From the IMG/VR virus record IMGVR_UViG_3300046507_000667, positions 124,001 through 188,000 of that record: 64,000 bases of DNA; one strand, written 5' to 3'. The notes below the pieces were generated by a model, which was not told the origin of the DNA, made no database searches, and was given only the letters and a program-made list of their open reading frames with translations. Position numbers and translations under genes: made by a program. Shown in pieces: positions 4,559-62,398 of the stretch. Numbering within the stretch: position 1 is the stretch's first letter; each line of letters begins with the position of its first letter.

Positions 4559-4570
4559 TATAATTCTGTT
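4559..4570 (-). promoter_or_regulatory. Late promoter AACA-N6-TA
   Basis: AACAGAATTATA, 28 nt upstream of ATG 4531. Confidence 0.65.
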
Positions 4571-4574
4571 ATGT

Positions 4575-4586
4575 AACATGAAAATA
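4575..4586 (+). promoter_or_regulatory. Late promoter AACA-N6-TA
   Basis: AACATGAAAATA, divergent partner of 4559-4570. Confidence 0.65.
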
Positions 4587-4615
4587 GTCAAGAATTTTCT
4601 ATAAGGAACCTAAAC

Positions 4616-5995
4616 GTGGTTACTTTAACTGATTTAAGCAAGAGAATTATTATCTCTGATAGTGTATCACAAACTACTGATACAATACTGGATTCTACTA
4701 GTCCTCCACACTTAAGACTAAATACAGACATCCTAGCACAGATTTCCACTACCCTATATGGTAAACAAGAGCTAATTGCTGAATCAATGGCTCTATCTAA
4801 GTATATGGCTCAAACTCTAAGAGAAGGGTTAGCAGATACTAACTACCATTTACAAGAAACTTTAGATGCCATTAATACCTTTAATGGGAAGACAGATATT
4901 CCATCGATTAATCTGTCTACTGTAGCTTCTCCATCAGTAATGTCAATGATGAGCTTTTTACCTACTACTGGTGTAGCTCCCGGCATTTCTGGTTATGTAA
5001 ATAATATAGTTGGATCAGCTTCTTCAGGTTTAGATAGAGCGGGTAATAGTATCATGGGAATGGCTTCTAAATTCTCACCTGATGCTTTACTTTCAAATCC
5101 ATTAGGTGCAATAGCTTCATTAGCTAAACTCTTACTTTGTCCTGAAAGAACTTTCCTTTCCGACATTACAAATGCTTTTAATAGTATTGCTTCAGGTTAC
5201 AATAATTTCAACCCTAGCAGTTTACTAAATACAGCTATGGGAGATCTATCTCAGTTCCTAAATAATTACGTACCGGGATTCTCTCCTTTAATGAGCTTCG
5301 TATCACTCCTTTCCAGATATCTAAAGACTGGAGGATCAGATATTGATTCAGCTATGTCAATGGTTGATCAGATTCTTAATGGTAATCAACTTGATCGCTC
5401 ATACTTACTGAATATTTCTCAGTTACAAGCATTAAAAGATCAGTTATCACCATCTAGCCCATATTATCAGTCTTCTACATCGAAGATTACTACTCCATTA
5501 GCCTTACCACAGGCTATAGATAGAACTAGGTGTTCAGAGCTAGCTAAAGTCATTAAACAACTCTTAGACACCTATAGAGCAGATAATAGATTTGAAGATG
5601 TACAGCTAAGAACCGACCTACTTTCTTCTATTAAGGATCCTGTACTAGCTAACAAAGTATCTAAATATATGGATGCTTCAGTTAAATGGTCACAAGATCA
5701 AAAGAAAAAAGACTTGGTAGATTCTATGGGTTATCAGAATACTACAGCCTTAAACTCAGCCCTAGCTGTATCGATGGTAAATGCTCAGACCATCAATAAT
5801 ACTAAGCAGGAACTAAAAGCTGTGAATGGTGATCCCGATAAACTATCTGTAGCTCAGGTTAACGCTAATAATAACTTACCCTACATACAGACAGTTAACA
5901 ATCAATCCATTCAAGATCTAAAATCATTCGAAGAGGGTATCGATTCAATAACTCGTACAGCTAATGTCTACAATATGAGCAAAGTATACGTTTAA
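4616..5995 (+). CDS. Hypothetical protein, probably virion-associated
   Basis: 459-aa ORF, AAGGA RBS, preceded by late promoter motif. Confidence 0.7.
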   Translation: MVTLTDLSKRIIISDSVSQTTDTILDSTSPPHLRLNTDILAQISTTLYGKQELIAESMALSKYMAQTLREGLADTNYHLQETLDAINTFNGKTDIPSINLSTVASPSVMSMMSFLPTTGVAPGISGYVNNIVGSASSGLDRAGNSIMGMASKFSPDALLSNPLGAIASLAKLLLCPERTFLSDITNAFNSIASGYNNFNPSSLLNTAMGDLSQFLNNYVPGFSPLMSFVSLLSRYLKTGGSDIDSAMSMVDQILNGNQLDRSYLLNISQLQALKDQLSPSSPYYQSSTSKITTPLALPQAIDRTRCSELAKVIKQLLDTYRADNRFEDVQLRTDLLSSIKDPVLANKVSKYMDASVKWSQDQKKKDLVDSMGYQNTTALNSALAVSMVNAQTINNTKQELKAVNGDPDKLSVAQVNANNNLPYIQTVNNQSIQDLKSFEEGIDSITRTANVYNMSKVYV

Positions 5996-6027
5996 TATTT
6001 TCACCATATAAATATCAAAACTACATT

Positions 6028-6349
6028 TTTAAAACCCTAGGGAGAAAAATCGTGATTTAATATTTTAATAGTACACTCACTATCACAAACTCAACTCCTT
6101 CAGATTTCCACTATGAGTAAGTCTCTCATATTTTCCGTAACCTAATAATGAAATATAAGCTAGAATCGCATCTATCCAGTTTAAAACCCTAGGGAGAAAA
6201 TTAGGTAGATATATTTCAATAGAGAAATTTTCTTGGGAAGGTAAGTCCTTGGGAAAACGTATAATCTGAAAGGTTGAGTAAAATATATTGTGGGTAATTT
6301 TATGCTATAAAAATATCGAATTTGATTTTTTAAAACCCTAGGGAGAAAA
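6028..6349. repeat. Three perfect 21-bp direct repeats TTTAAAACCCTAGGGAGAAAA (candidate iterons)
   Basis: Copies at 6028-6048, 6180-6200 and 6329-6349 in a 450-bp intergenic region; palindromic CCCTAGGG core. Confidence 0.85.
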
Positions 6350-6448
6350 ATAGGAGAATGATATTTTAATGGGAAATTGTATAGAATTAGTTTAATAGAG
6401 ATTTTGAATTAGAAACTTTTTACTGAAACTTCAAGGGAAAAATATATT

Positions 6449-7246: not shown

Positions 7247-7258
7247 AACATTGAAATA
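7247..7258 (+). promoter_or_regulatory. Late promoter AACA-N6-TA
   Basis: AACATTGAAATA upstream of the protease transcription unit. Confidence 0.6.
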
Positions 7259-8679: not shown

Positions 8680-8695
8680 CAATCGAATAATATAT
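8680..8695 (-). promoter_or_regulatory. Early promoter ATATATTAT-N5-TG
   Basis: ATATATTAT tcgat TG. Confidence 0.75.
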
Positions 8696-8720
8696 CAATA
8701 AAAAATGAAGTAATACGATA

Positions 8721-8753
8721 ATTCCTATATCCCTCTATGAAGGATATAGGAGT
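8721..8753. terminator. CCC(T/C)ATAC-family hairpin
   Basis: TCCTATATCC/GGATATAGGA stem just after the stop at 8758. Confidence 0.7.
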
Positions 8754-8757
8754 TTAC

Positions 8758-9090
8758 TCACCAATAAGTAGGATCATTTTCAACTACAATTGATCTCATT
8801 ATTGGCTTGACTATCTCTTGTTTAGGTGCAAAGACACCTTCACTGAAAAGATAATCAAGTATCATTCGATAGCCATCTTCTTCATATACATTACTGTATC
8901 CGTCAAACATGGCATGAAGATTTGTATTGGATTCAAGCTTCCAATACTCGAAATCACCATCAAAGCCAACTTGCTTTTTAGTAATCCCATGATTAATGCA
9001 AAATTCTTCAACAGATTGAGATACTTTAATGAAATAAATTCCCCGTTCATTACAGTACTCTTTTGCTGACAATGCATTTTCAAGACACAT
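8758..9090 (-). CDS. Hypothetical early protein
   Basis: 110 aa, between hairpin and early promoter. Confidence 0.7.
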   Translation of the reverse strand: MCLENALSAKEYCNERGIYFIKVSQSVEEFCINHGITKKQVGFDGDFEYWKLESNTNLHAMFDGYSNVYEEDGYRMILDYLFSEGVFAPKQEIVKPIMRSIVVENDPTYW

Positions 9091-9128
9091 TATATTTTCT
9101 CTTGTGCTAGAAGGTTATTATTGCTATT

Positions 9129-9144
9129 CACTCAAATAATATAT
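9129..9144 (-). promoter_or_regulatory. Early promoter ATATATTAT-N5-TG
   Basis: ATATATTAT ttgag TG. Confidence 0.75.
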
Positions 9145-9168
9145 CATTAAAAAATAAAGTGATACGAT

Positions 9169-9205
9169 AAACTCCCTATACCTTCCGAAGAAGATATAGG
9201 GGTTT
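9169..9205. terminator. CCC(T/C)ATAC-family hairpin
   Basis: CCCTATACCTTC/GAAGATATAGGG stem. Confidence 0.7.
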
Positions 9206-9243
9206 ATTCTTTACCACGCTCTCAGGTCTACCACGTCCTACCC

Positions 9244-9648
9244 TTACAGGTGATAGCCATTGATTAATAGGCGTTCACCAATTTCGAATAGTGTTTCATG
9301 ATTATCATCATAGACCGAATAAATCTTTTGACGGAGTTTGCCATTTGCTAAAGCATAGACATACTCATCACCAACCCATTGTTGGAGTTCGGTATCATAG
9401 CGAATATCCATGCGGAACTTAATGTCCACATCATTCTTTTCAAGACGAAAAGTTGCTTTGCTGGTGAAAGGTGCAAGAATCGTTTCATTCTTAACAGAAA
9501 TCAAATCATTTGCCCAAGTCATCAGGTCAGAAATAAATTCTGCTTTTTGTGAAGAATGTCGATCTTCTTCTTTGACTTTCTTTAGAAGACTTTCAGTAAT
9601 CTTAACGAAATCTACACCAAAACCCGGTTGTACTTGATCAGTACTCAT
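9244..9648 (-). CDS. Hypothetical early protein
   Basis: 134 aa, GAGGA RBS. Confidence 0.7.
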   Translation of the reverse strand: MSTDQVQPGFGVDFVKITESLLKKVKEEDRHSSQKAEFISDLMTWANDLISVKNETILAPFTSKATFRLEKNDVDIKFRMDIRYDTELQQWVGDEYVYALANGKLRQKIYSVYDDNHETLFEIGERLLINGYHL

Positions 9649-9687
9649 TTCTTTTCCTCTTTAATTAAAGATTTATGTAATACTTGT

Positions 9688-9703
9688 CAATGGTATAATA
9701 TAT
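9688..9703 (-). promoter_or_regulatory. Early promoter ATATATTAT-N5-TG
   Basis: ATATATTAT accat TG. Confidence 0.75.
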
Positions 9704-9730
9704 CACCAAAAAATAAAGAGATACGCTATA

Positions 9731-9760
9731 CCCCATACCTCCATCAAGGAAGGTATGGGG
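9731..9760. terminator. CCC(T/C)ATAC-family hairpin
   Basis: CCCCATACCT/AGGTATGGGG stem. Confidence 0.7.
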
Positions 9761-9770
9761 ATAATATAAG

Positions 9771-10076
9771 TTAGCTGTCAGCTATCCTATTGAGCAATGC
9801 TGCATAATACTCTTTTGTGTCATAACCATCAGACACTGACTTGTCTGCATCATCAATATAATTTCTTAAAGCAAAGATGAATGCATCCATATCTTCTTCA
9901 TACGATGTATCAGGATCATAGTACTTGAATTCAGTACCAATCAAAGCTGCTAACTTTGAAACCTGACCTATCGTAGCATCAGAAAATATCAAGTCATATT
10001 GTTCCTTCACGTCAAGAGAGCTTTCACGGATATTCTCACAAATACCATGAATGAGTTCTAACTTGAACAGCAGCAT
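9771..10076 (-). CDS. Hypothetical protein
   Basis: 101 aa, AAGGAG RBS. Confidence 0.7.
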   Translation of the reverse strand: MLLFKLELIHGICENIRESSLDVKEQYDLIFSDATIGQVSKLAALIGTEFKYYDPDTSYEEDMDAFIFALRNYIDDADKSVSDGYDTKEYYAALLNRIADS

Positions 10077-10085
10077 TATTTCTCC

Positions 10086-10604
10086 TTAATAATCTTTACC
10101 ACGTACATCATTAAGCTCTTTATCAAGCTTAACAGTACTTACTGATACACATTGAGAGCTAATACGATCTGTCTTTAATTTCTCACAGATATACTTACAA
10201 GCTTGCTCAGTAGTAAGCTTTCCCTCAGTGTACCAAATAGACAATCGGCGATTGCCACGCATACCGAAATCATGATCAAGTTCAATCTTAGTAATAGTAT
10301 TGGTAGATTTACTATCAAGATTGCCTTTAGCTGCAGCATCCTCATATGCTGATTCTTCAGAAGTAAAATACCCTTCTGAAAGTTTTTCAAGCTTGTCGTT
10401 GAACCAATACCACTTATTAGATGTCATCGCTTTAGAGGCAAAGTAACCTGCAGAGTTACAAATGTCTTTAAGCGTACCTTTTTCAGCATCCTTCTTAATC
10501 TGTTCAAGCAAATCAAGAATTTGCTTAACTGACATCGAGTCACTCTTCTTATATTCGCTGAAAACTGCGATTCTTTCTTCGATTGACTTAACCAACGAGT
10601 TCAT
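10086..10604 (-). CDS. Hypothetical protein
   Basis: 172 aa, AAGGA RBS, operon packing. Confidence 0.7.
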   Translation of the reverse strand: MNSLVKSIEERIAVFSEYKKSDSMSVKQILDLLEQIKKDAEKGTLKDICNSAGYFASKAMTSNKWYWFNDKLEKLSEGYFTSEESAYEDAAAKGNLDSKSTNTITKIELDHDFGMRGNRRLSIWYTEGKLTTEQACKYICEKLKTDRISSQCVSVSTVKLDKELNDVRGKDY

Positions 10605-10616
10605 TTTCTTCTTTCC

Positions 10617-11030
10617 TTAGATGATTTCTTGATAATTTTTATAGAAAATACACTGCATCAATTCAAAACAAGCTTCTTCTTTTGTCAAGAAGTATTTTTT
10701 GACAGTCAGTACTTGCTGAAGCTTCTCATTATCATATGCAAGTTCATAAAACTTGAATTGCTTACGAGAAGGACAAAAGTGAGCATAGGCATGATAGTCA
10801 ATCATACCTTCAGTCTTACGTGTCTCAACAATCTGAGTATTCAAGCAACCTAAAACATGCTCACGATTACGGTCAAGCTTTTTGAGAATAACCTTAATCT
10901 GATCAAGACCTCCTACAACTGGAGTTCCTTTCATAGAGATAGGCTTATTTTCATGAAGCTTTTTCGTTACTTCGGCAGCAGCTAAATCAACACCTTCCAA
11001 GGCGCAAGAAACATCAGCCATGGTAACCAT
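10617..11030 (-). CDS. Hypothetical protein
   Basis: 137 aa, AAGGA RBS. Confidence 0.7.
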   Translation of the reverse strand: MVTMADVSCALEGVDLAAAEVTKKLHENKPISMKGTPVVGGLDQIKVILKKLDRNREHVLGCLNTQIVETRKTEGMIDYHAYAHFCPSRKQFKFYELAYDNEKLQQVLTVKKYFLTKEEACFELMQCIFYKNYQEII

Positions 11031-11039
11031 TACTTTTCC

Positions 11040-11144
11040 TTAGTTTAAATAGTTATACCACAAATAAAGCAGTGATGCAACAACAGGTGTAACAAGATAC
11101 AGATAGTTGGATGCTACAAATTTCCTAGGTTTATCATCATCCAT
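11040..11144 (-). CDS. Putative 34-aa single-TM peptide MDDDKPRKFVASNYLYLVTPVVASLLYLWYNYLN
   Basis: Fills the gap; its stop overlaps the RBS of the next gene; below ORF-track cutoff. Confidence 0.45.
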   Translation of the reverse strand: MDDDKPRKFVASNYLYLVTPVVASLLYLWYNYLN

Positions 11145-11178
11145 ACAATCTTTTCTTGGAACACAGAAAAACAATGAT

Positions 11179-11216
11179 AATCCTATACTCTCCCTCGTAT
11201 GAAAGAGTATAGGATT
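11179..11216. terminator. CCC(T/C)ATAC-family hairpin
   Basis: AATCCTATACTCT/AGAGTATAGGATT stem. Confidence 0.7.
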
Positions 11217-11228
11217 CCATTACACTAT

Positions 11229-11438
11229 TTAATGTAAAGACATACTGGCCGCGTAATTATTTTCAAGTAGCATACCCATTTCCACTCGCTCTTTTGTTTC
11301 CAACATGTTCTTTCGAACTTCAGGAATCTCCAGATTGAGGAAGTTATGCGCTCCTACATCAAGCAAGTAGAGATGCTCCATGATAGTATTACGCATAACA
11401 AGCTGATGCAAGAATTCTGTTTCAGAGTCAAAGCACAT
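11229..11438 (-). CDS. Hypothetical protein (start moved to ATG 11438)
   Basis: AAAGGA RBS precedes MCFDSETEF; the longer track start overlaps the upstream gene. Confidence 0.6.
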   Translation of the reverse strand: MCFDSETEFLHQLVMRNTIMEHLYLLDVGAHNFLNLEIPEVRKNMLETKERVEMGMLLENNYAASMSLH

Positions 11439-11520
11439 GATTTTTCCTTTTGCAATTAGTAGAATTATTGATTTTATAGTTACAAAGATAAAATATATGT
11501 CTGATTGCTGCTTCAATACC

Positions 11521-11907
11521 CTATGGAAGTTGGGCGTTGATATCTTGCTGAACAAGCTCAGGCTTTTCTAATCGTTTCCAAATTAATAAGCTTGCCACAT
11601 ATGCAGATAATTGATGGAGAACAGTCTGCACCTCTATAAGATAGTGCATTTGATCATTCTTGTCGTCCATTAAGTATATACATATTGCCGTTATCTGATC
11701 TTCGTTATAACGTTGACAATCTAATAATTTTTTAAGCCGAGTAGTATAGTTTTTTGCAATCTTGATCTCTTGCAAGGTAACAAGACTTTTCATTTCTTCA
11801 ATCTTGTTAAAGTATGATTGGATATAAGATACATCATACTTCTTGCCATGTTGAGTGAACTTTTTGAGTTCAGACTTTAGAGACCTTAAAGATGGTAGTT
11901 GTGCCAC
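11521..11907 (-). CDS. Hypothetical early protein, probable paralog of 12110-12472
   Basis: 128 aa, AGGAG RBS, GTG start. Confidence 0.65.
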   Translation of the reverse strand: MAQLPSLRSLKSELKKFTQHGKKYDVSYIQSYFNKIEEMKSLVTLQEIKIAKNYTTRLKKLLDCQRYNEDQITAICIYLMDDKNDQMHYLIEVQTVLHQLSAYVASLLIWKRLEKPELVQQDINAQLP

Positions 11908-11944
11908 TTTTATCTCCTATAACTGTACTATACATCAGGTACGA

Positions 11945-11960
11945 CATAAAAATAATATAT
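11945..11960 (-). promoter_or_regulatory. Early promoter ATATATTAT-N5-TG
   Basis: ATATATTAT tttta TG. Confidence 0.75.
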
Positions 11961-12069
11961 ATTTAAACAAAAAATAAGTACAGTAGTAGTAAACCCTATC
12001 CTTCTAAATTAAAATAGTTATATATCGCTACACTCAAATACTATTTTAATAAAAACAAAGTTATCACAC

Positions 12070-12101
12070 CCCCTACTCCTTCTCTCAATAAGGAGTAGGG
12101 G
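12070..12101. terminator. CCC(T/C)ATAC-family hairpin (variant)
   Basis: CCCCTACTCCTT/AAGGAGTAGGGG stem. Confidence 0.7.
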
Positions 12102-12109
12102 ATTATACT

Positions 12110-12472
12110 TTATTCTATATGGGCTAGCTCCTGTTTAGGTTTGTCTAGCTCCAATCGTCGAGTATATAGAACTTTCTTAATCTCTTTAATAGTATTCATT
12201 CGTTTTTTGATGTCTAATACTTCTCTATTGAACATGTAGTCTACGAATTGAACTGCAATATTACCAAACCTCCTAGCAATTAATCGGTTCTCGCCATGAA
12301 TGCGACGAGTTTTCTGATAAAGGAGTTCTAACTGAAACATCACATCACTGTAGTGTTTTCGCTTTCTATTTATAGTACTTTTATCCATGCTTTTGAAGCC
12401 AGTTTTATAGTAATGGAGAGATGCTTCCAAATTAGCAAGACTTGGTATTTCAACCTTTACTGGTGCTGGCAT
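12110..12472 (-). CDS. Hypothetical basic early protein
   Basis: 120 aa, AAGGA RBS. Confidence 0.7.
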   Translation of the reverse strand: MPAPVKVEIPSLANLEASLHYYKTGFKSMDKSTINRKRKHYSDVMFQLELLYQKTRRIHGENRLIARRFGNIAVQFVDYMFNREVLDIKKRMNTIKEIKKVLYTRRLELDKPKQELAHIE

Positions 12473-12533
12473 TTCATCTTCCTTTCAAATATTAATATAT
12501 TGCTGACTACTTTTGCAACGGTACTACGTACAT

Positions 12534-12549
12534 CAAATATATAATATAT
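12534..12549 (-). promoter_or_regulatory. Early promoter ATATATTAT-N5-TG
   Basis: ATATATTAT atatt TG. Confidence 0.75.
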
Positions 12550-12578
12550 TTACAAAAAATAAGCAAGTACAAAAATAA

Positions 12579-12607
12579 CCCCATACCCTCTTTTCGAAGG
12601 TATGGGG
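12579..12607. terminator. CCC(T/C)ATAC-family hairpin
   Basis: CCCCATACC/GGTATGGGG stem. Confidence 0.7.
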
Positions 12608-12614
12608 AATTCAA

Positions 12615-13328
12615 TTACTCATCACGCTTATAGTTAACTTGACGGCTATCCATTACAGCACGCATATCTGCAAGAAGCTTTTCAAAGTTTGCAAGATCTG
12701 CAGCATTCGTTCTAATAAGATCATCAATTCGCTTATCAAACTTCTTATTCACATAAGCTAAGCCAACTGTTTCAATTGACGGATCTTCACTAGTGAGTCG
12801 ATGCAATTCAGCCATTTCTTCATGGCGTTCCTTGTTAATCTTATCAATAGCTTGACCATTCTCTTGCTTTAGTTGCTTAACCTGAACACGAAGACGCTCA
12901 TGAAGAGAAGTTAATGAACTATTGATAGTTTCATTTAATCCTTTACGAAACTCATCACTAGGTGCAATAAGTGCCTTAAACTTAACTTGAATCTCATCTT
13001 CACCATAAACAGCCAGCTTAACATCTTCAGTATTGGCAATACCAAGAAGTGCGAGATGATGATTCATCATTAAAATAAAATCATTAAACTTCTTAAGAGT
13101 ATTATATTCACGAGAATTATAAGACCTTAGATGTTTAACAAGTGCATCGATATTTTTATTATGCAAATTAACATAAGAGCCGGGATTATCAGTATTAATC
13201 TCAACTTCCTTAACGTTATTATTCATAGCTAGATGAATCTTAGTACGAATATTGCTAAAAGCTGTGATAAAATCAGCAAATAGATTAGCGTATTTACTTT
13301 GGGGAAGAGGATGAATTGTAGCAGTCAT
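12615..13328 (-). CDS. Hypothetical coiled-coil protein
   Basis: 237 aa, ATGA overlap with the upstream gene. Confidence 0.7.
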   Translation of the reverse strand: MTATIHPLPQSKYANLFADFITAFSNIRTKIHLAMNNNVKEVEINTDNPGSYVNLHNKNIDALVKHLRSYNSREYNTLKKFNDFILMMNHHLALLGIANTEDVKLAVYGEDEIQVKFKALIAPSDEFRKGLNETINSSLTSLHERLRVQVKQLKQENGQAIDKINKERHEEMAELHRLTSEDPSIETVGLAYVNKKFDKRIDDLIRTNAADLANFEKLLADMRAVMDSRQVNYKRDE

Positions 13329-13630
13329 TTGTTAACCTTTTGGGTGAGTTCTTTGAGATAATTGTACTGCTCGATAGGCTCTTTAGTAAAAGCAAGCATG
13401 ATTTCAGAATGCATTGCTTCTACTAAACGAATCATTTCTCTACTAACTTCAGATTTCTTGAAAGCATCAGCTTCAATCAATACTGGACCACTATTGTGGC
13501 GATATCCTACTCTACCATCCTCAAGTATGATTACATCATACAAGTTTCTTGCTGTCTCGTGAGTCAATCGAATAGCTTTAGTTGACTCTTTGGTCTTTTG
13601 GTTTACGAAGACATTGGTAGCAAAGTACAT
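13325..13630 (-). CDS. Hypothetical protein
   Basis: 101 aa, operon packing. Confidence 0.65.
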   Translation of the reverse strand: MYFATNVFVNQKTKESTKAIRLTHETARNLYDVIILEDGRVGYRHNSGPVLIEADAFKKSEVSREMIRLVEAMHSEIMLAFTKEPIEQYNYLKELTQKVNK

Positions 13631-13633
13631 AGA

Positions 13634-14221
13634 TTATCGCCGTGGTAGTTGAAATACAGGAGCCTTTGCAACTGCTGAAAGAGCAATTGATGAAGCTTCT
13701 TGATTAGCAAAATCAGGATTGCATTCAGGGCGATATACAACCTTGTAATTACGCGCACGCTGTTCAAAACTAACTACATGGCGTAGCTTAATAACTTCAA
13801 CATATGCCTCCCAATGACGTGGAAGACCATCTTTCTTTTCATAAAACTTTTGGAAAGATACTGCAAAGATCTTTTCAACCTTGAATGGATCTGGATGATC
13901 AACGAATGCACAAACTGAATGATTCTTAAGAAGTTCAGCAAGCTGTAGTTGTCGTTCAGCTAGAGTCGTGCCATCAGAAATAAGAGACTGGCGCATCCAA
14001 GCATTGACTTTAGTTGCAATGGCTGGATGAGGAAACTCATTATAACCGCCCATATTCAAATGCATTGCCATTGCTTCAAGAAGATTCCTCTTGGTACGCT
14101 CAATAAAATGATGCTTACCAGTCTTTTCATTGAAACTATAATGACTAATTGACTGTGGCATTGGCTTTACTTGCCGATCAAGAAGTTTACCATCTTTCTT
14201 AAGTTCAAATACGTTTGACAT
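13634..14221 (-). CDS. Hypothetical protein
   Basis: 195 aa, AAGGA RBS. Confidence 0.7.
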   Translation of the reverse strand: MSNVFELKKDGKLLDRQVKPMPQSISHYSFNEKTGKHHFIERTKRNLLEAMAMHLNMGGYNEFPHPAIATKVNAWMRQSLISDGTTLAERQLQLAELLKNHSVCAFVDHPDPFKVEKIFAVSFQKFYEKKDGLPRHWEAYVEVIKLRHVVSFEQRARNYKVVYRPECNPDFANQEASSIALSAVAKAPVFQLPRR

Positions 14222-14254
14222 GATACTTTCCTTAGTAGATTTATTAGTAAAAAA

Positions 14255-14551
14255 TTAAGCTGATACAGGGATTAAGTTATTAATATTACTGTAATCAAAT
14301 TCACTAGCTGTACAACGACCACGATCTGAGGCACGGTTATAGCGCCAACCTAGACCATTGGATGCACCATCATTTCCTTGGATACACTCATATGGAGTTC
14401 CTTCATTGGAAATTTTGATGATCTTAATCTTCTTACCACCGATTGTATAATAGATCTTACCTACTTTAAAAGGTACACTCTTATCAATCAATGCTTGAAA
14501 TTCTTCTTTCGTAAAACGACGATTCTTTTTGCTTTTAGCGTATGAAGGCAT
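14255..14551 (-). CDS. Hypothetical basic protein
   Basis: 98 aa. Confidence 0.65.
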   Translation of the reverse strand: MPSYAKSKKNRRFTKEEFQALIDKSVPFKVGKIYYTIGGKKIKIIKISNEGTPYECIQGNDGASNGLGWRYNRASDRGRCTASEFDYSNINNLIPVSA

Positions 14552-14616
14552 GGTAGCTCTTTTATTAGAAGAAAAAGAAAAAAGGAACCCATTTAGGATT
14601 CCTTCTCTGCAATTAT

Positions 14617-14859
14617 TTAAACTGCATTAAATGAGGTCTTTTGCGCCTCATCGGGATTTTCTATTATTTCTTTATAATTATTATATGCAATCACTGTAAA
14701 GAAGATGAAAGTGATTGCCATCGTTACAAGCGCAGCCTTGCGACCAGCAAACAGAAGTACGAAGAAGTTGATAGCTGTAAAGAACATTACAGCTACAGCT
14801 ATTTTCAATGATACCGCCACTTGCAAGGCAGGAATCATCGAAAGATCTATCGTATTCAT
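14617..14859 (-). CDS. Small two-TM membrane protein
   Basis: 80 aa, two hydrophobic stretches, AAGGA RBS. Confidence 0.65.
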   Translation of the reverse strand: MNTIDLSMIPALQVAVSLKIAVAVMFFTAINFFVLLFAGRKAALVTMAITFIFFTVIAYNNYKEIIENPDEAQKTSFNAV

Positions 14860-14897
14860 GTGTTTCTTTCCTTTCAGTCCGAAGACTCTAATTAGAT

Positions 14898-15116
14898 TTA
14901 TAGCGACTTACGATCAGTAACGATGCTACATAGTAATGCCATAGCAATTACAATCATAACCGACAGGCCTGCACCTACTTTACTAAATGCCTTAATATGC
15001 TCAAAAGGCATTGCCACCATATTCAAAATCATAAAGATAATGATTGGCAGTATAAGAATAACTGCAAGTACACTAAACAGTCCGGGCGTTTTGCCGTTGG
15101 CTTTATTATTAATCAT
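14898..15116 (-). CDS. Small two-TM membrane protein
   Basis: 72 aa, two hydrophobic stretches. Confidence 0.6.
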   Translation of the reverse strand: MINNKANGKTPGLFSVLAVILILPIIIFMILNMVAMPFEHIKAFSKVGAGLSVMIVIAMALLCSIVTDRKSL

Positions 15117-15174
15117 GACGTTATTTACTTTGGTTTGAATATTTATTGGTTTACCTGCAGCTACTCAAATTCAA

Positions 15175-15444
15175 TTAACGCTGATAATGGCTATAGTAAC
15201 GCTTGCCATTGAATTGCTTACGACGTGCCAGACTGATAGCCTGAATGATACGACCATCCATAATCAGCACATACAACGTTCCGAGAAGGAGAGCAATTAC
15301 AAAGAGCAAATTGAAAACGATGATATTTTCTTGAATGAACGGAATCGTTTTGAACTTCTCATAGATACGAGCAAGAAGATTCCAACCAAGAATGATCGTC
15401 GTAACAGTTGCAGCGAAAACAACAGAATTGATAAACTTTTTCAT
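15175..15444 (-). CDS. Small two-TM membrane protein
   Basis: 89 aa, two hydrophobic stretches. Confidence 0.6.
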   Translation of the reverse strand: MKKFINSVVFAATVTTIILGWNLLARIYEKFKTIPFIQENIIVFNLLFVIALLLGTLYVLIMDGRIIQAISLARRKQFNGKRYYSHYQR

Positions 15445-15472
15445 GATTCTTTATGATTAATTAGAATGAGAA

Positions 15473-16075
15473 TTAGATAGAATATGGCATTTCTGCCACT
15501 TCCTTTGCATCAACACATTGAAGATCCACTACATTCCAGAACTTATCGATCTGAGCTTTACGATTATTAATCGCATGATCAATCGCTGATTGCTGATCTG
15601 GAAAATCCTGCTGTACTATTGATACATAGTTATTTGCTGCACGAATATCTTTAAGACTTGCAGAGAGAACTGCATATGCATCATCATCATCACCCGTCAT
15701 ATTGCAATGATGAAGTAATTGCTCATCAAATCTCGATACAGCAAGATTATTTGATAAATCAACTACATGCGTCGTGTCTTTATCTTTTTCAGACGCCTTC
15801 TCGAACGCCAGAGGATTAGGGTTACTGTAAAGCGCATCATGGATGGTCTCACCAACAAGGCATTCTTCTTCGTCGCCAAGAGGGATGTGACGCCCAAAAT
15901 CTTCTTGGTAAAGGATTGCATTTGCCGCTCCGATCTTATTTCCGGGAAGACCTGCAACTTCTTTGATTACGAATGAATCCGGATGTTCCTCTGTATTATA
16001 GTGAACTTCAAATTCACCATCTGAATCATCTGTGACAAAACGAAACTTTTCACCTTGTTTAATACGGATTTCCAT
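15473..16075 (-). CDS. Hypothetical acidic protein
   Basis: 200 aa, TAAGGA RBS. Confidence 0.7.
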   Translation of the reverse strand: MEIRIKQGEKFRFVTDDSDGEFEVHYNTEEHPDSFVIKEVAGLPGNKIGAANAILYQEDFGRHIPLGDEEECLVGETIHDALYSNPNPLAFEKASEKDKDTTHVVDLSNNLAVSRFDEQLLHHCNMTGDDDDAYAVLSASLKDIRAANNYVSIVQQDFPDQQSAIDHAINNRKAQIDKFWNVVDLQCVDAKEVAEMPYSI

Positions 16076-16092
16076 TCTTTTCCTTAATTGGA

Positions 16093-16428
16093 TTAGATTT
16101 CTGGAGGTGCTACAGGAGCAAAGGGAAGAGGTTTATACTCTAATAGAGCCTCGATCCTTGCTATCAATTCTTGTGGTGCTGTAAGTTTAAGCCAAGGTAA
16201 TACTTCTTGGAATAATTGGTAGCAATCTGATTCACGAAAATGTTCTCCTCGTTTATCATATCCTCGCATTATGGCATTTGCAAACCATGAATGCATCCAT
16301 TCTTCATCAAGAGCAGCTACAGGTTCTTTTGTTTTAAGAATATCAACAAAACCTTTAGCCCAATCTCTAGCATCAAAAGAATGATACCAATCTGGTACCT
16401 TACTAGCCCCTTTATCTGAACTTGTCAT
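16093..16428 (-). CDS. Hypothetical protein, possibly leaderless
   Basis: 111 aa; ATG lies at the early-promoter start region. Confidence 0.65.
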   Translation of the reverse strand: MTSSDKGASKVPDWYHSFDARDWAKGFVDILKTKEPVAALDEEWMHSWFANAIMRGYDKRGEHFRESDCYQLFQEVLPWLKLTAPQELIARIEALLEYKPLPFAPVAPPEI

Positions 16429-16441
16429 GAAGATAATATAT
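16426..16441 (-). promoter_or_regulatory. Early promoter ATATATTAT-N5-TG
   Basis: ATATATTAT cttca TG. Confidence 0.7.
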
Positions 16442-18568: not shown

Positions 18569-18570
18569 GA

Positions 18571-51209: not shown

Positions 51210-51394
51210 TCAAGTAGTACCTATTAAAATATTTATTAATTCTGTCACATACGAATATTCTTTCAAACTTCAAGAAAAAAAGTATTCGTATAAGTACATA
51301 TTACAAATATCGTCCTTTAGTATTTCTTTGTTGGTAGAGTGTGAAATTTCCCGTTATTCCACACTCTACTTCTTATTTACTATAGAACGCTATT

Positions 51395-54907: not shown

Positions 54908-54919
54908 AACAACTTTATA
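54908..54919 (+). promoter_or_regulatory. Late promoter AACA-N6-TA
   Basis: AACAACTTTATA upstream of the neck gene. Confidence 0.6.
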
Positions 54920-54925
54920 ATATAT
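54910..54925 (-). promoter_or_regulatory. Early promoter ATATATTAT-N5-TG
   Basis: ATATATTAT aaagt TG, heading the sbcD operon. Confidence 0.7.
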
Positions 54926-59369: not shown

Positions 59370-59381
59370 TATTTATTTGTT
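59370..59381 (-). promoter_or_regulatory. AACA-N6-TA promoter upstream of gyrA
   Basis: AACAAATAAATA. Confidence 0.55.
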
Positions 59382-60451: not shown

Positions 60452-60471
60452 TGTATACTCTTTAGAAAGAC

Positions 60472-60499
60472 TCCCTATACTCTTTTCAGAGTATAGGGA
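60472..60499. terminator. CCC(T/C)ATAC-family hairpin
   Basis: Perfect 12-bp stem after the gyrB stop. Confidence 0.75.
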
Positions 60500-60506
60500 A
60501 TTCATA

Positions 60507-61577
60507 TTACTCTAGAACATCACTTGTATCAGTGCTATTAAAGATATTGATTAGGAATTCCTTACGGAACTCTGCATCTTTGCCCATGAATCGCTTCATA
60601 GTGTCTTTCATATCTTTGCCTGGAAGTACTTGGATAAGTTGACGACGCTCAGGATCAAGAGTCGAGTTCCAAATATCTTCAGCAGAAGCTTCTCCCCATC
60701 CCTTGAATCGTGTCACAATAACAGACTTCTTGACATGATCTAGGAGGTTATTGAATACTTCAAAGTATGAGTCACCTTCGATCTGCTTGCCACGGCTTGT
60801 TGTTTCAAAGCTATAGTTTGCAATTTCAGCTAGTGCTTCATAGAGATCTGATACATCTTGTACAAATTGACCACCATCGACATTGACAATACAAACGAAA
60901 TCTTCTTGGATTGCTCCCTTATAGAATCCGATAATATTTACATTGTCGCCAGTAGTTTCAGTTACTTCGATACGATCACCAAAATCAATCTCACCACCTT
61001 CGGCATCGAAGTTTTGTACAAAGACTGATTCAAAGATACGTGGATTGATATTGTACTTCTTTGCAGCTAGTTTAAGAGCATGCAGATAGTTACGAATTTT
61101 TCCAATTACCTTTTCTTTTTCAGACTTCTTAGAAACTTCCTTTTCATCTACAGTAAATTTGAATGAACTTTCAATCTCATTAACGAGATATGCATTCAAG
61201 TCTTTCTCATTACGTAGATAAGATAGCTTGTGACCATCTTTAATTACCCGATAAAGAGGTGATACTGCAATATACAGACGACCTGCTTCAATCAATGGTG
61301 CAGTAAGTTCACCGAACATGGTTGTTGCAAGCATTTCGATGTGCTTACCATCGGAGTCTGCATCGGCAAGGATGATGATTTTGTTGAACTTGAGCTTTTC
61401 AAGATTAAAGCTACTACCAGTATCACACTTAAGGATAGTAACAATATCGTCAATTTCATCATTATTTCGCGCTTTATGCGGTTCAAGTCCGAAGACATTT
61501 TTCGGCTTTCCTTTCAGTTTATATACTGCCTGAAAACGCTTATCACGAGCATCCTTTACTGTACCGCCAGCCGAATC
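60507..61577 (-). CDS. gyrB: DNA gyrase subunit B, exon 2 (TOPRIM)
   Basis: DSAGG, LKGKPKN, DADSDG and RFKGWGE motifs; spliced product 802 aa. Confidence 0.92.
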   Translation of the reverse strand, partial: DSAGGTVKDARDKRFQAVYKLKGKPKNVFGLEPHKARNNDEIDDIVTILKCDTGSSFNLEKLKFNKIIILADADSDGKHIEMLATTMFGELTAPLIEAGRLYIAVSPLYRVIKDGHKLSYLRNEKDLNAYLVNEIESSFKFTVDEKEVSKKSEKEKVIGKIRNYLHALKLAAKKYNINPRIFESVFVQNFDAEGGEIDFGDRIEVTETTGDNVNIIGFYKGAIQEDFVCIVNVDGGQFVQDVSDLYEALAEIANYSFETTSRGKQIEGDSYFEVFNNLLDHVKKSVIVTRFKGWGEASAEDIWNSTLDPERRQLIQVLPGKDMKDTMKRFMGKDAEFRKEFLINIFNSTDTSDVLE

Positions 61578-61620
61578 CATATGTTAACCCTAGTATCGTT
61601 ATTACTAAAGTATGTATGAT

Positions 61621-62364
61621 TTAAATTTCTAAATCAATAATATCCCGCTCATATAATTGCTTAATGATAAAAGCAGATGTCATCATTCCATGTAGAGAAG
61701 GAACTCGAATTACTTCAATTCCATGCTCTTTGCAAAGTTTAAACTTAGTTTTGTCTCTATTCATTGTCTTTGGAAATTCAGCTTCTCTTCCTTGCTTGGA
61801 AATATAATGCTGTTCACCATCACATTCAATAGCTAAGTTGTACTCTGGTAGGAAGAAATCAATCCTAAGACCAAATTCTAGCTTAAGCCAGTCAAAAGTC
61901 TTTTCTTCTTCATATACAATTTCAACTTCATCCAGTACTTCTTTAACTGCAATTGAAGTCTTTGATTTAGTTTGATTACATGGACACCTAGTACCATTAT
62001 GAAATAAATCAGGACGAGTTTTCCAATCCTTTCCACAGGTCTTATGTCTAAGTAATACATGAGTTTTGTTATTCACATAGCTACTAATTAAAGTATATTC
62101 ATTTCCTGTCAAATCTTTTAGCTTTTGACTAAATTCTTCAGCAGTATAACTCCATGATCTATGTGTAGCACACTTGGGACAATTATTCGGTTTTGGTTTA
62201 AGAAAATCATAAGGAGACGTGGTTCCCCACTCATGCCCACACTTATTGTGTTTGAGCATAATAGGATCATGATTCCGAATATACTGTCCTAGAACTGTAT
62301 ACTCTTTACCATATCGATCGCTAACTCGTTTACAAAATTCATCATGTGTAAGTTGTTTTGGCAT
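61621..62364 (-). CDS. Intron-encoded homing endonuclease (Zn-ribbon repeats plus Vsr-like/EDxHD nuclease)
   Basis: Two H..CG..W..CP repeats; IDFFLP..IECDGEQHY. Confidence 0.85.
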   Translation of the reverse strand: MPKQLTHDEFCKRVSDRYGKEYTVLGQYIRNHDPIMLKHNKCGHEWGTTSPYDFLKPKPNNCPKCATHRSWSYTAEEFSQKLKDLTGNEYTLISSYVNNKTHVLLRHKTCGKDWKTRPDLFHNGTRCPCNQTKSKTSIAVKEVLDEVEIVYEEEKTFDWLKLEFGLRIDFFLPEYNLAIECDGEQHYISKQGREAEFPKTMNRDKTKFKLCKEHGIEVIRVPSLHGMMTSAFIIKQLYERDIIDLEI

Positions 62365-62386
62365 TACAATTCTCAGTAGTAGAAAC

Positions 62387-62398
62387 TAAGAATCTGTT
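62387..62398 (-). promoter_or_regulatory. Late promoter inside the intron, driving the endonuclease
   Basis: AACAGATTCTTA, 23 nt upstream of the HEG ATG. Confidence 0.65.

What the first reader, a model, noticed from the sequence alone, without database searches (positions are those of the whole stretch)
4559..62398. AR9-type late promoter motif suggests a non-virion RNAP and possibly uracil-DNA
Seen: AACA-N6-TA lies shortly upstream of 11 transcription units (4559-, 4575+, 7247+, 22858+, 28954-, 40845-, 46338-, 46363+, 54908+, 59370-, 62387-), mostly structural genes. Chance matches are common in AT-rich DNA (my estimate ~40 per strand here), so the signal is the position, not the count. Established: the AR9 non-virion RNAP reads template-strand 3'-UUGU-N6-AU-5' and needs deoxyuridine; AR9, PBS1 and phiR1-37 have U-DNA. 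Inference: this phage uses the same recognition and may carry dU in place of dT.
Basis: partly seen in the sequence, partly recalled or inferred. Interest (0 to 1): 0.6.

Follow-up and report, generated by a model that had tools for sequence, protein, structure and literature searches.

The report
AR9-type late promoters, probable uracil-DNA phage
The short DNA word AACA-N6-TA really does mark the late-gene start signals of this uncultured 249-kb soil phage, which carries the matching phage RNA polymerase and uracil-DNA enzymes, so it is a new, well-behaved member of a known but rare phage group rather than a new kind of system.

Summary
Observation confirmed, interpretation supported. The window is bases 124001-188000 of a complete 249,347-bp jumbo phage from rhizosphere metagenomes. 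Its closest cultured relative is the dU-DNA phage phiR1-37.

All 11 reported sites exist. AACA-N6-TA is strongly depleted overall: 22 in the window against 72±9 expected. Yet 49 of 97 genomic copies lie in the 4% of oriented sequence just upstream of genes (p~1e-41). An unbiased scan of 49,152 gapped patterns ranks it first in this phage, in phiR1-37 and in AR9, the validated control. Spacing is strictly N6. The extended consensus is AAC(A/C)-N5-W-TA-G.

Outside the window the genome encodes all four split nvRNAP subunits. It also encodes a gp226 sigma-like subunit with the uracil-selecting valine (AR9 V206), which is invariant in 30 homologs. A second, AR9-type early promoter class (ATATATTAT-N5-TG) drives the nvRNAP and replication genes. 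Virion genes are late-only.

Uracil-DNA is likely but unproven. Orthologs of phiR1-37's characterised dCTP deaminase and dTTP pyrophosphatase are present in conserved gene order. ThyA, ThyX and dUTPase are absent.

Start sites could not be mapped. Verdict: new member of a known kind, moderate interest.

The parts
4559..4570 (-). Late promoter AACAGAATTATAg. It lies 27-28 nt upstream of the tape-measure-like gene (2-4531, which runs off the window; 2090 aa in the genome). It is one half of a divergent pair.
   Evidence: AR9 gp204 homolog; the AR9 ortholog also has the motif
4575..4586 (+). Late promoter AACATGAAAATAg, 29 nt upstream of gene 4616-5995 (459 aa, no family match).
   Evidence: The phiR1-37 ortholog carries the motif at the same 29-nt distance.
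7247..7258 (+). Late promoter AACATTGAAATAa. It lies 22 nt upstream of a 22-codon ORF (7281-7349) with a GAGGGAA Shine-Dalgarno sequence, followed by the head maturation protease gene 7399-8205.
   Evidence: phrog_3014, E = 1e-33
22858..22869 (+). Late promoter AACATTCATATAg, 49 nt upstream of 22919-23239 and the PhoH-like gene 23317-24108.
28954..28965 (-). Late promoter AACATGTTTATAg, 45 nt upstream of tail gene 27478-28908 and three paralogous tail-fibre/collar genes (26333-27421, 25238-26323, 24149-25228).
40845..40856 (-). Late promoter AACATTCATATAg, 49 nt upstream of 39452-40795 (phrog_12249, 'tail sheath'). It heads a run of ~440-aa genes on the same strand down to 33317; four of them (33317-39352) are paralogs of one another by BLASTP.
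46338..46349 (-). Probable late promoter AACAAATAGATAt, 29 nt upstream of ATG 46308 of the baseplate-region operon (45703-46308, baseplate wedge 44710-45444). It is the only candidate in this divergent intergenic region. It lacks the +2 G.
46363..46374 (+). Late promoter AACATGAAATTAa, 26 nt upstream of 46401-47285 (294 aa, unknown function).
54908..54919 (+). Late promoter AACAACTTTATAa, 25 nt upstream of virion structural protein gene 54945-55664.
   Evidence: phrog_18911, E = 1e-72. The phiR1-37 ortholog has the motif.
59370..59381 (-). Late-type promoter AACAAATAAATAg, 29 nt upstream of the GyrA/topoisomerase II gene 56884-59340. This is a non-structural gene carrying a late motif.
62387..62398 (-). 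Late promoter AACAGATTCTTAg, 23 nt upstream of the HNH homing endonuclease gene 61621-62364. It lies inside the gyrB group I intron.
51321..51332 (-). It is intergenic, 111 nt upstream of the DnaB-like fragment 50463-51209. It is a weak candidate because +2 is C.
22164..22175 (+). Variant late promoter AACCATAGAATAg (C at -8), 59 nt upstream of the guanylate-kinase-like gene 22235-22792.
33245..33256 (-). Variant late promoter AACCTTTTATTAg, 56 nt upstream of 29688-33188 (1166 aa).
42040..42051 (-). Variant late promoter AACCTTTATATAg, 39 nt upstream of 40864-42000. It follows a hairpin and T-run.
43435..43446 (-). Variant late promoter AACCTTAAGATAg, 82 nt upstream of 42672-43352.
8687..22056 (-). 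Early-gene cluster with seven AR9-type early (vRNAP) promoters, (A/G)ATATATTAT-N5-TG. Cores are at 8687-8694, 9136-9143, 9695-9702, 11952-11959, 12541-12548, 16433-16440 and 22049-22056 (the last for SbcC, 19247-22030). The cluster holds no promoter-like late motif.
54917..54924 (-). Early promoter core, 79 nt upstream of 54094-54837. It overlaps the 54908(+) late promoter in the divergent region.
62426..62653 (-). Group I intron core that splits gyrB (exons within 62604-63965 and 60507-61580).
   Evidence: RF00028, 77.8 bits, E = 4.7e-18

Best explanation
AACA-N6-TA is the late promoter of this phage. The fuller form is AAC(A/C)-N5-W-T-A-G.

Inferred mechanism, by homology with AR9:
- A phage-encoded, rifampicin-type-independent non-virion RNA polymerase reads the motif. 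It consists of four split beta/beta' polypeptides plus a gp226-like sigma-like subunit.
- The enzyme reads the complementary template strand, 3'-UUGU-5' at -11 to -8 and 3'-AU-5' at -1/+1.
- It starts RNA at the final A, usually followed by G.

The temporal programme matches AR9's:
- A virion-packaged vRNAP fires ATATATTAT-N5-TG early promoters. These drive the nvRNAP subunits, gp226, replication genes and the dU-DNA enzymes.
- The nvRNAP then fires the AACA promoters. These drive head, tail, baseplate, tape-measure and vRNAP-subunit genes.

The DNA most likely carries deoxyuridine in place of thymidine. An early dCTP deaminase (Dcd) would supply dUTP. A Ham1-type dTTP pyrophosphatase (Dtt), possibly helped by a Dtm-like nucleotidase, would remove thymidine nucleotides. 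The conserved valine in the gp226 helix would then make promoter recognition uracil-specific and therefore phage-specific.

Shown here: motif statistics, gene content, conserved residues, and the match between promoter class and gene function.
Inferred: start site, template-strand reading, uracil dependence, and dU in the DNA.
For: Motif statistics
- It ranks first of 49,152 patterns in this phage, in phiR1-37 and in the experimentally validated AR9.
- 49 of 97 copies lie in 4% of oriented sequence (p = 1e-41), and the gap is strictly N6.
- 31 of the 37 genomic copies of AACA-N5-W-TAG lie upstream of genes.
- Promoter-like copies carry +2 G in 34 of 54 cases, against 7 of 43 for the rest (p = 4e-6).

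Avoidance inside genes, against synonymous-codon shuffles
- Sense strand: 32 observed against 98 expected.
- Antisense strand: 6 observed against 55 expected.

Conservation
- Motif presence is conserved with phiR1-37 orthologs: 27 both, 12 and 8 one-sided, 55 neither (odds ratio 15.5, p = 7e-9).
- The motif also sits in gene-proximal intergenic positions in a relative sampled at 55% GC.

Polymerase
- All five nvRNAP components are present.
- The gp226 homolog matches only AR9 gp226 among solved structures.
- V206, Y210 and the surrounding helix are invariant in 30 homologs.

Programme logic
- All 22 AR9-virion orthologs with an assignable promoter are late-only. Non-virion orthologs split 14 early, 2 both and 7 late (p = 5e-7).
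- nvRNAP, gp226, Dcd and Dtt are early, and vRNAP subunits are late.

Uracil-DNA
- The Dcd ortholog (51% identity) keeps HAE...PCxxC. The Dtt ortholog is Ham1p_like (E = 2e-21). Both lie in phiR1-37's gene order.
- No ThyA, ThyX or dUTPase was found.

Published basis
- AR9 start sites and consensus: PMC5312081.
- Uracil dependence and template-strand reading: PMC5449584, PMC9209446.
- dU enzymes: PMC12697855.
Against: - No start site is mapped. The only RNA data are assembled contigs from a 92-97% identical relative in root metatranscriptomes. They cover two late-motif genes and stop 38 nt short of the predicted capsid +1. They cannot show a 5' end or rule out DNA carry-over.
- No UGI homolog was found.
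- Some replication genes carry the late motif: GyrA, GyrB, DNA polymerase, the nvRNAP beta-N gene and a helicase. The early/late split is therefore not absolute. AR9 also has continuously expressed genes.
- Co-occurrence of the motif with AR9 orthologs is not significant (odds ratio 1.7, p = 0.43).
- Two DNA-contacting gp226 positions differ: F261 to A and Y263 to F. Both are main-chain contacts.
- The phage reaches about 270x word depth in a metagenome whose library type is not on record. If that library had been amplified with a uracil-stalling polymerase, such depth would be hard to reconcile with dU-DNA.
- Gene starts come from my own crude ORF calling.
Confidence: 0.82

Rival explanations
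1. The motif is a genuine nvRNAP late promoter, but the genome contains ordinary thymidine or is only partly substituted. On this reading the Dcd and Dtt homologs serve general nucleotide-pool functions.
For: - No UGI homolog was found.
- No direct chemical evidence exists.
- The phage is deeply covered in shotgun metagenomes whose library method is unknown.
- dCMP-deaminase-fold and Ham1-fold enzymes also occur in T-DNA phages (general knowledge).
Against: - The valine that excludes thymine's methyl group in AR9 is invariant here and in all 30 homologs. In AR9, V206G is what allows thymine (PMC9209446).
- The Dcd and Dtt genes are reciprocal-best, syntenic orthologs of the phiR1-37 enzymes shown to be a dCTP deaminase and a dTTP pyrophosphatase.
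- ThyA, ThyX and dUTPase are absent.
- gp226 and capsid homologs occur only in the clade whose tested members have dU-DNA.
Confidence: 0.12
2. The motif is a real upstream signal but is read by something other than the gp226-type nvRNAP. Candidates are host RNA polymerase with a phage factor, a DNA-binding regulator, or an RNA-level element such as a processing or translation signal.
For: - No start sites are mapped.
- The phiR1-37 transcriptome study reported no late consensus and suggested weak sigma70-like promoters upstream of structural genes (PMC4848604).
Against: - The motif is identical in sequence and spacing to the AR9 promoter, which was defined by start-site mapping, in vitro transcription and structures.
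- The cognate enzyme is encoded here with its DNA-reading residues intact.
- Distance to the start codon ranges from 9 to 147 nt (median 35), which argues against a translation signal.
- The motif is avoided on both strands inside genes. That fits a DNA-level initiation signal.
Confidence: 0.04
3. The pattern is a chance by-product of AT-rich intergenic DNA.
For: - The motif has only six fixed bases.
- Intergenic DNA here is AT-rich.
- A naive k-mer enrichment is dominated by AT-rich words.
Against: - Binomial p = 1e-41 for position.
- Rank 1 of 49,152 patterns against antisense and reversed controls, in three genomes.
- Strict N6 spacing.
- AT-richer one-base variants such as AATA and AAAA-N6-TA show no strand bias.
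- Positions are conserved with phiR1-37.
Confidence: 0.01

Closest known systems
Bacillus phage AR9 / PBS1 late promoters read by the AR9 nvRNAP holoenzyme (gp105, gp089, gp270, gp154 and gp226)
   Same: - Same six fixed bases and the same N6 spacing.
- Same position upstream of virion genes.
- The same five polymerase components are encoded.
- Same early promoter core (ATATATTAT), with nvRNAP genes under early control.
- The uracil-selecting valine and its helix are conserved.
   Different: - Proteins are only 25-45% identical, and only 64 reciprocal-best orthologs are shared.
- This phage prefers G at +2 and W at -2. It does not use the AR9 TG alternative (1 sense, 1 antisense). It appears to tolerate C at -8.
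- The motif is strongly purged from coding sequence here, at 0.33x on the sense strand and 0.11x on the antisense strand. In AR9 it is barely purged (0.90x and 0.83x).
- No UGI homolog is present.
- The thymidine-removal enzyme is phiR1-37's Dtt type, alongside a Dtm-like gene.
Yersinia phage phiR1-37 (dU-DNA jumbo phage)
   Same: - It is the closest cultured relative: capsid 55%, gp226 homolog 43%, 102 reciprocal-best orthologs at a mean of 42% identity.
- Same AACA-N6-TAG motif, ranked first in the same scan.
- Promoter positions are conserved at 27 ortholog pairs.
- Syntenic Dcd and Dtt genes.
- Neither genome has a UGI homolog.
   Different: - This genome comes from rhizosphere metagenomes and its host is unknown.
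- It has 35% GC, against 32.5% for phiR1-37.
- Motif avoidance inside genes is about twice as strong.
- In the papers read here, no late consensus was reported for phiR1-37 (PMC4848604, PMC5312081). The shared motif is my computation, not a published fact that I could find.
phiKZ-type nvRNAP with gp68, which reads TATG late promoters on thymine DNA
   Same: - Split beta/beta' architecture plus a fifth specificity subunit.
- The fold search places phiKZ's fifth subunit as the next-best match (8QUE_B, E = 6e-7).
   Different: - The promoter differs: TATG at the start site, with no AACA element.
- phiKZ has thymine DNA.
- No sequence-level match to phiKZ proteins appeared in the gp226 or capsid searches.

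Membership tests
AR9-type nvRNAP late promoter | Non-template consensus AACA-(N6)-TA/G with fixed spacing | tested here: met
   The motif ranks first, the gap is N6 only, and all six positions are needed except -8 (A or C).
AR9-type nvRNAP late promoter | Located upstream of late (virion) genes; absent from early-only units | tested here: met
   22 of 22 virion orthologs are late-only (Fisher p = 5e-7). Searches cover the window genes.
AR9-type nvRNAP late promoter | Transcription starts at the final A/G of the motif | tested here: inconclusive
   Only RNA contigs from a 92-97% identical relative are available. They cover the capsid gene and reach 40 nt into its leader, stopping 38 nt short of the predicted +1. 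Contigs cannot define 5' ends.
AR9-type nvRNAP late promoter | Recognition in the template strand, requiring deoxyuridine at -11 and -10 | not testable with these tools
   This needs in vitro transcription on dU versus dT templates. Only the protein determinants could be checked.
AR9/phiR1-37-type non-virion RNAP holoenzyme | Four split beta/beta' subunit genes | tested here: met
   
- Genome 45927-47435, gp105-like, E = 3e-83.
- Genome 232420-234363, gp089-like, E = 4e-115.
- Genome 212431-213783, gp270-like, E = 8e-55.
- Genome 96766-98571, gp154-like, E = 6e-77.
One search adds the Pfam Rpb1/Rpb2 domains.
AR9/phiR1-37-type non-virion RNAP holoenzyme | gp226-family promoter-specificity subunit | tested here: met
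   The gene lies at genome 242577-244043.
- E = 1e-28 to AR9 gp226.
- 43% identical to phiR1-37 g245.
- the only PDB sequence match is 7S01_A.
- the best fold match is 7S01_A, E = 4e-17, over the full length.
AR9/phiR1-37-type non-virion RNAP holoenzyme | Uracil-selecting 2.1bis helix (YSD-V206-W-Y210-L) and the gp105 R363 pocket partner | tested here: met
- V, W, Y and L are invariant in 30 homologs.
- R363 is conserved.
- I207 to M and K375 to R are conservative changes.
dU-DNA phages (PBS1/AR9, phiR1-37, S6) | Phage dCTP deaminase (Dcd) supplying dUTP | tested here: met
- It is the reciprocal-best ortholog of phiR1-37 g103, at 51% identity.
- It matches dCMP_cyt_deam_1 (E = 5.5e-18).
- The HAE...PCxxC site is kept and the gene order is conserved.
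- Substrate specificity is inferred, not assayed.
dU-DNA phages (PBS1/AR9, phiR1-37, S6) | Enzyme that removes thymidine nucleotides (Dtt or Dtm) | tested here: met
- There is an ortholog of phiR1-37 g100 (Dtt): Ham1p_like, E = 2e-21, with an early promoter.
- There is also a weak homolog of AR9 gp151 (Dtm) at genome 40926-41765.
- Activity has not been assayed.
dU-DNA phages (PBS1/AR9, phiR1-37, S6) | No thymidylate synthase or dUTPase | tested here: met
   PF00303, PF02511 and PF00692 are absent from this genome, phiR1-37 and AR9, and are found in the control genomes. PF08761 (dimeric dUTPase) was not searched.
dU-DNA phages (PBS1/AR9, phiR1-37, S6) | Uracil-DNA glycosylase inhibitor (PBS2/AR9 UGI) | tested here: not met
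   There is no tblastn hit better than E = 17. phiR1-37, a proven dU phage, also has none, so this feature defines the PBS1 group and not the whole class.
dU-DNA phages (PBS1/AR9, phiR1-37, S6) | Deoxyuridine in place of thymidine in virion DNA | not testable with these tools
   Sequencing reads U as T. This needs LC-MS, UDG sensitivity or native-DNA signal analysis.

The most novel reading that the evidence does not exclude
The gp226-bearing jumbo phages may form a broad environmental clade that universally combines dU-DNA with uracil-dependent late promoters. Its members here come from soil, rhizosphere and other metagenomes, and the sampled loci span 28-55% GC.

In the lineage of this phage, the 6-8-base motif may be close to sufficient for initiation in vivo. 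Selection would then have purged it from coding DNA, down to 0.11x on the antisense strand. That purge is far stronger than in AR9, where internal and antisense late promoters are tolerated and active.

If so, the late promoter could be predicted from sequence alone across the clade. This would include phiR1-37, for which the transcriptome study reported no late consensus. Motif avoidance would then be a measurable force shaping these genomes.
Probability: 0.35. Interest if true: 0.6.

Novelty: new member of a known kind. Interest (0 to 1): 0.45.

Why it matters
- **A wider setting for a rare mechanism.** A sigma-like subunit reading uracils in the template strand is so far established only for AR9. 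These results extend it to a distant, uncultured rhizosphere relative and, by the same computation, to phiR1-37. In the papers I read, phiR1-37 had no late consensus.
- **A sequence-only recipe.** The combination is the AACA-N5-W-TAG motif, a gp226 with the conserved valine, Dcd plus Dtt or Dtm, and no ThyA, ThyX or dUTPase. It could flag probable dU-DNA phages in metagenomes. Such phages may be undercounted when libraries are amplified with uracil-stalling polymerases.
- **A new quantitative observation.** The strong purge of the motif from coding DNA bears on how a very short promoter stays specific.

Tried and rejected
- **Megablast of 20 kb of the window against phage records:** no match. 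Relatives were reachable only at the protein level.
- **Naive k-mer enrichment upstream of genes:** dominated by AT-rich words and the Shine-Dalgarno sequence, so uninformative. I replaced it with a gapped-dyad scan using antisense and reversed controls.
- **First synonymous-shuffle script:** timed out and was rewritten.
- **The search for related loci with the virion protein 54945-55664:** no relative in the viral contigs.
- **Motif co-occurrence with AR9 orthologs:** not significant. I do not claim positional conservation with AR9.
- **UGI search:** negative in both this phage and phiR1-37.
- **Laying reads to map start sites:** only assembled contigs were available, so there is no 5'-end information. 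I report this as consistent with the model, not as support.
- **AACA-N6-TG, the AR9 alternative:** not used here (1 sense, 1 antisense).
- **tRNA scan of the window:** none found.
- **Complex prediction:** not used. The gp226-core interaction is claimed by homology only.

Full report
**Context**

The window is bases 124001-188000 of a 249,347-bp virus record with direct terminal repeats, estimated complete. It has 35% GC. The stretch I searched with, 5.8 kb around the capsid gene, is held by rhizosphere metagenome runs. It has no nucleotide-level match among 50,697 phage records.

By protein, the closest cultured relative is Yersinia phage phiR1-37, with capsid 55% and gp226 homolog 43% identical. 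AR9/PBS1-like Bacillus phages follow at about 30%, then Listeria phage LPJP1 and the S6-like Staphylococcus jumbo phages. Both queries hit exactly the same 21 records. I called 313 genes with a crude longest-ORF procedure. All gene-relative statistics depend on that calling.

**Checking the observation**

All 11 sites are exact matches at the stated places. The window holds 22 matches on both strands. Dinucleotide-preserving shuffles give 72±9, and all 100 shuffles had at least 22. The whole genome has 97 copies, against 240 for the reversed pattern.

Of the 97 copies, 56 are intergenic, although only 9% of the genome is non-coding. Forty-nine lie in the 4.07% of oriented sequence that forms upstream regions (binomial p = 1e-41). 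The median distance from motif end to start codon is 35 nt, with an interquartile range of 26-61.

I ranked them by excess over both antisense and reversed controls. AACA-N6-TA came first (49 sense, 13 antisense, 18 reversed), ahead of the Shine-Dalgarno word AGGAAA. The same scan ranks it first in phiR1-37 (60, 17, 13). It also ranks first in AR9 (60, 22, 11), where the promoter is experimentally established, so AR9 acts as a positive control.

The gap is strictly six bases: 49 regions, against 5-15 for N2-N10. Every single-base substitution of the six fixed positions abolishes the strand bias, with one exception. That exception is AACC-N6-TA, at 11 sense and 2 antisense, and 8 of those 11 carry G at +2.

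The logo adds W at -2 (46 of 49) and G at +2 (31 of 49). Of the 37 genomic copies of AACA-N5-W-TAG, 31 are upstream of genes. The copies that are not promoter-like are degenerate. They carry +2 G in 7 of 43 cases, against 34 of 54 for promoter-like copies (p = 4e-6).

Site details:
- 46338(-) lies 29 nt upstream of an in-frame ATG at 46308. The PHROG profile alignment supports that ATG as the true start.
- 7247(+) precedes a 22-codon ORF with a Shine-Dalgarno sequence and then the head protease gene.
- 62387(-) precedes an HNH homing endonuclease inside a group I intron in gyrB.

**Avoidance inside genes**

I compared observed counts with shuffles that permute synonymous codons within each gene.

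| Genome | Sense strand | Antisense strand | AACA tetramer |
|---|---|---|---|
| This phage | 32 vs 98 expected (0.33x, z = -10.9) | 6 vs 55 expected (0.11x, z = -7.4) | 0.65x (sense) |
| phiR1-37 | 0.58x | 0.54x | 0.77x (sense) |
| AR9 | 0.90x | 0.83x | 1.0x |

The full motif is therefore purged well beyond the tetramer alone. In this phage AACA ranks 9th and TGTT 15th most depleted of 256 tetramers. Those ranked above them are mostly CpG-containing or Shine-Dalgarno-like words, plus C- and T-runs. In AR9 the two tetramers rank 132nd and 122nd.

This fits a short signal that is functionally potent on either strand. In AR9, 13 internal and 7 antisense late promoters are active (PMC5312081).

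**What reads the motif**

tblastn against the AR9 genome finds 73 shared proteins. The homologs, in genome coordinates, are:
- nvRNAP beta-N, 45927-47435, E = 3e-83.
- nvRNAP beta-C, 232420-234363, E = 4e-115.
- nvRNAP beta'-N, 212431-213783, E = 8e-55.
- nvRNAP beta'-C, 96766-98571, E = 6e-77.
- gp226, 242577-244043, E = 1e-28.
- The virion RNAP subunits.

Pfam confirms Rpb1/Rpb2 domains. The gp226 homolog's only sequence match among solved structures is AR9 gp226 (7S01/7UM0/7UM1, E = 2.8e-26). An AlphaFold2 model (pLDDT 82.5) matches 7S01_A best (E = 4e-17, full length). The phiKZ fifth subunit 8QUE_B comes next (E = 6e-7).

The AR9 structure paper names the determinants (PMC9209446):
- -10U sits between gp226 I207 and gp105 R363.
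- Its C5 atom is 3.9 Å from V206, and V206G lets the enzyme accept thymine.
- -9G stacks on Y210.

In this phage V206 is V, I207 is M, Y210 is Y, S245 is S and R363 is R. The helix reads YSDkVMWsYLKN, against AR9's YSDvVIWtYLKN. Across AR9, phiR1-37, this phage and 27 metagenomic homologs, Y202, S203, D204, V206, W208, Y210 and L211 are invariant.

**The programme as a whole**

A second motif, (A/G)ATATATTAT-N5-TG, occurs in 45 upstream regions. It matches AR9's annotated early promoters (AAATATATATTAT).

I assigned each gene to the nearest upstream promoter class along its operon:
- All 22 orthologs of AR9 virion genes with an assignment are late-only. Two of these are intron homing endonucleases that overlap spliced vRNAP coordinates.
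- Non-virion orthologs split 14 early, 2 both and 7 late (Fisher p = 5e-7).
- nvRNAP beta'-C, beta'-N, beta-C and gp226 are early, and beta-N has both classes.
- Four of the five vRNAP subunit genes are late, and one has no assigned promoter.
- Dcd, Dtt and the Dtm-like gene are early.

This is the logic of AR9: the packaged vRNAP makes the nvRNAP, and the nvRNAP makes virions, including new vRNAP.

Motif presence is conserved between orthologs of this phage and phiR1-37: 27 both, 12 and 8 one-sided, 55 neither (odds ratio 15.5, p = 7e-9). It is not conserved with AR9 (p = 0.43). In a 21-kb sample of a relative at 55% GC, 3 of 5 copies are intergenic and gene-proximal, including a divergent pair.

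**Uracil-DNA**

The 2025 study of dU-DNA biosynthesis showed two things (PMC12697855):
- phiR1-37 uses a dCTP deaminase (Dcd, annotated as dCMP deaminase) and a neighbouring Ham1-type dTTP pyrophosphatase (Dtt).
- PBS1 uses a Dcd and a dTMP phosphatase (Dtm).

In the phiR1-37 record these are g103 and g100, flanking the nvRNAP beta'-C gene g102. This phage has reciprocal-best orthologs of both, in the same order around its beta'-C gene:
- Dcd, genome 96190-96732, 51% identical. It keeps HAE...PCxxC and, like phiR1-37's enzyme, lacks the PBS1-type second metal-site insertion.
- Dtt, genome 100380-101441, 31% identical, Ham1p_like (E = 2e-21).

It also has a weak homolog of the PBS1/AR9 Dtm, at genome 40926-41765. 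ThyA, ThyX and the trimeric dUTPase family are absent from this genome, phiR1-37 and AR9, while the control genomes score. No UGI homolog exists here or in phiR1-37, so its absence tells us nothing.

Together with the invariant valine and the clade placement, this makes dU-DNA likely. I put it at about 0.8. It is not shown.

**Transcript evidence**

Two root metatranscriptome runs hold contigs 92-97% identical to the capsid region. They cover only the capsid gene and one other late-motif gene, and none of the early genes between them. One contig reaches 40 nt into the 77-nt capsid leader and ends 38 nt before the predicted +1. Contigs cannot define 5' ends or strand, and DNA carry-over is not excluded. 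This is compatible with the model, nothing more.

**Comparison with what is known, and novelty**

The system works like AR9's. It passes every membership test that sequence can address. It fails only the UGI test, which phiR1-37 also fails.

Differences from AR9:
- A preference for G at +2 and W at -2.
- No use of the TG variant.
- Apparent tolerance of C at -8, the position where AR9's enzyme is least selective.
- Far stronger motif avoidance inside genes.

In the papers I could read:
- The phiR1-37 transcriptome study found "no new conserved sequences" upstream of non-early start sites (PMC4848604).
- MEME did not recover a late motif in the MarsHill-type Staphylococcus phages (10.1101/2020.12.14.422802).
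- The structure paper did predict a common uracil-dependent mechanism for gp226-bearing phages (PMC9209446).

A specialist would therefore not be surprised by the result. The useful additions are the explicit motif for the phiR1-37 lineage, the sequence-only detectability, and the avoidance signal. I file this as a new member of a known kind, with interest 0.45.

Noticed in passing
window 60507-63965 (-): gyrB is split by a group I intron (Rfam RF00028, 62426-62653, 77.8 bits). The intron carries an HNH homing endonuclease gene (61621-62364) with its own late-type promoter (62387-62398). This recalls the late promoters of intron endonucleases in T4 (from my own knowledge).
   Followed up: partly
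window 48347-51209 (-): The DnaB-like helicase is in two pieces (48347-49303 and 50463-51209, both homologous to AR9 gp007). A homing-endonuclease gene (49381-50370) sits between them and is a paralog of the gyrB intron endonuclease. Rfam found no intron core here at gathering threshold.
   Followed up: partly
window 24149-27421 (-) and 33317-40795 (-): There are two tandem gene arrays in late operons. The first has three ~360-aa tail-fibre/collar paralogs, 41-43% identical. The second is a run of five ~440-aa genes. Four of them (33317-39352) are paralogs at 26-32% identity. The first gene in the run (39452-40795) matches phrog_12249, 'tail sheath'.
   Followed up: partly
whole genome (G000), coding regions: The late motif is purged from coding DNA to 0.33x on the sense strand and 0.11x on the antisense strand, relative to synonymous-shuffle expectation. 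This is much stronger than in phiR1-37 (about 0.55x) or AR9 (about 0.85x). AACA and TGTT are among the 15 most depleted tetramers here but unremarkable in AR9.
   Followed up: yes
phiR1-37 genome (W01; loci L019-L032): AACA-N6-TA(G) is the top-ranked strand-specific upstream pattern in phiR1-37, found in 60 upstream regions. Of its 61 genomic AACA-N5-W-TAG copies, 52 lie upstream of genes. The papers read here state that no late consensus was found for this phage.
   Followed up: partly
window 45671-45678 (-): A full early-type promoter match (TATATATTAT-N5-TG) sits between 45703-46308 and the baseplate wedge gene 44710-45444. That places an early-class signal inside a structural operon. I have no explanation for it.
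   Followed up: no
window 54908-54924: A late promoter on the + strand (54908-54919) and an early promoter core on the - strand (54917-54924) overlap by three bases in a divergent intergenic region.
   Followed up: no
L041 (263-kb JGI contig) and L042 (221-kb ENA contig): The gp226 family has at least 27 metagenomic members, on contigs of up to 263 kb. The sampled loci span 28-55% GC. The GroEL - x - gp226 gene order is conserved. In the 55% GC relative, 3 of 5 motif copies are gene-proximal and intergenic.
   Followed up: partly
L033 (genome 83600-89400): Root metatranscriptome runs contain contigs 92-97% identical to the capsid gene and one other late gene. A close relative of this phage was therefore present, and probably active, in plant-root samples from a different study.
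   Followed up: partly
window 7281-7349 (+): A 22-codon ORF with a strong Shine-Dalgarno sequence lies between the 7247 late promoter and the head protease gene. I did not test whether it is coding.
   Followed up: no
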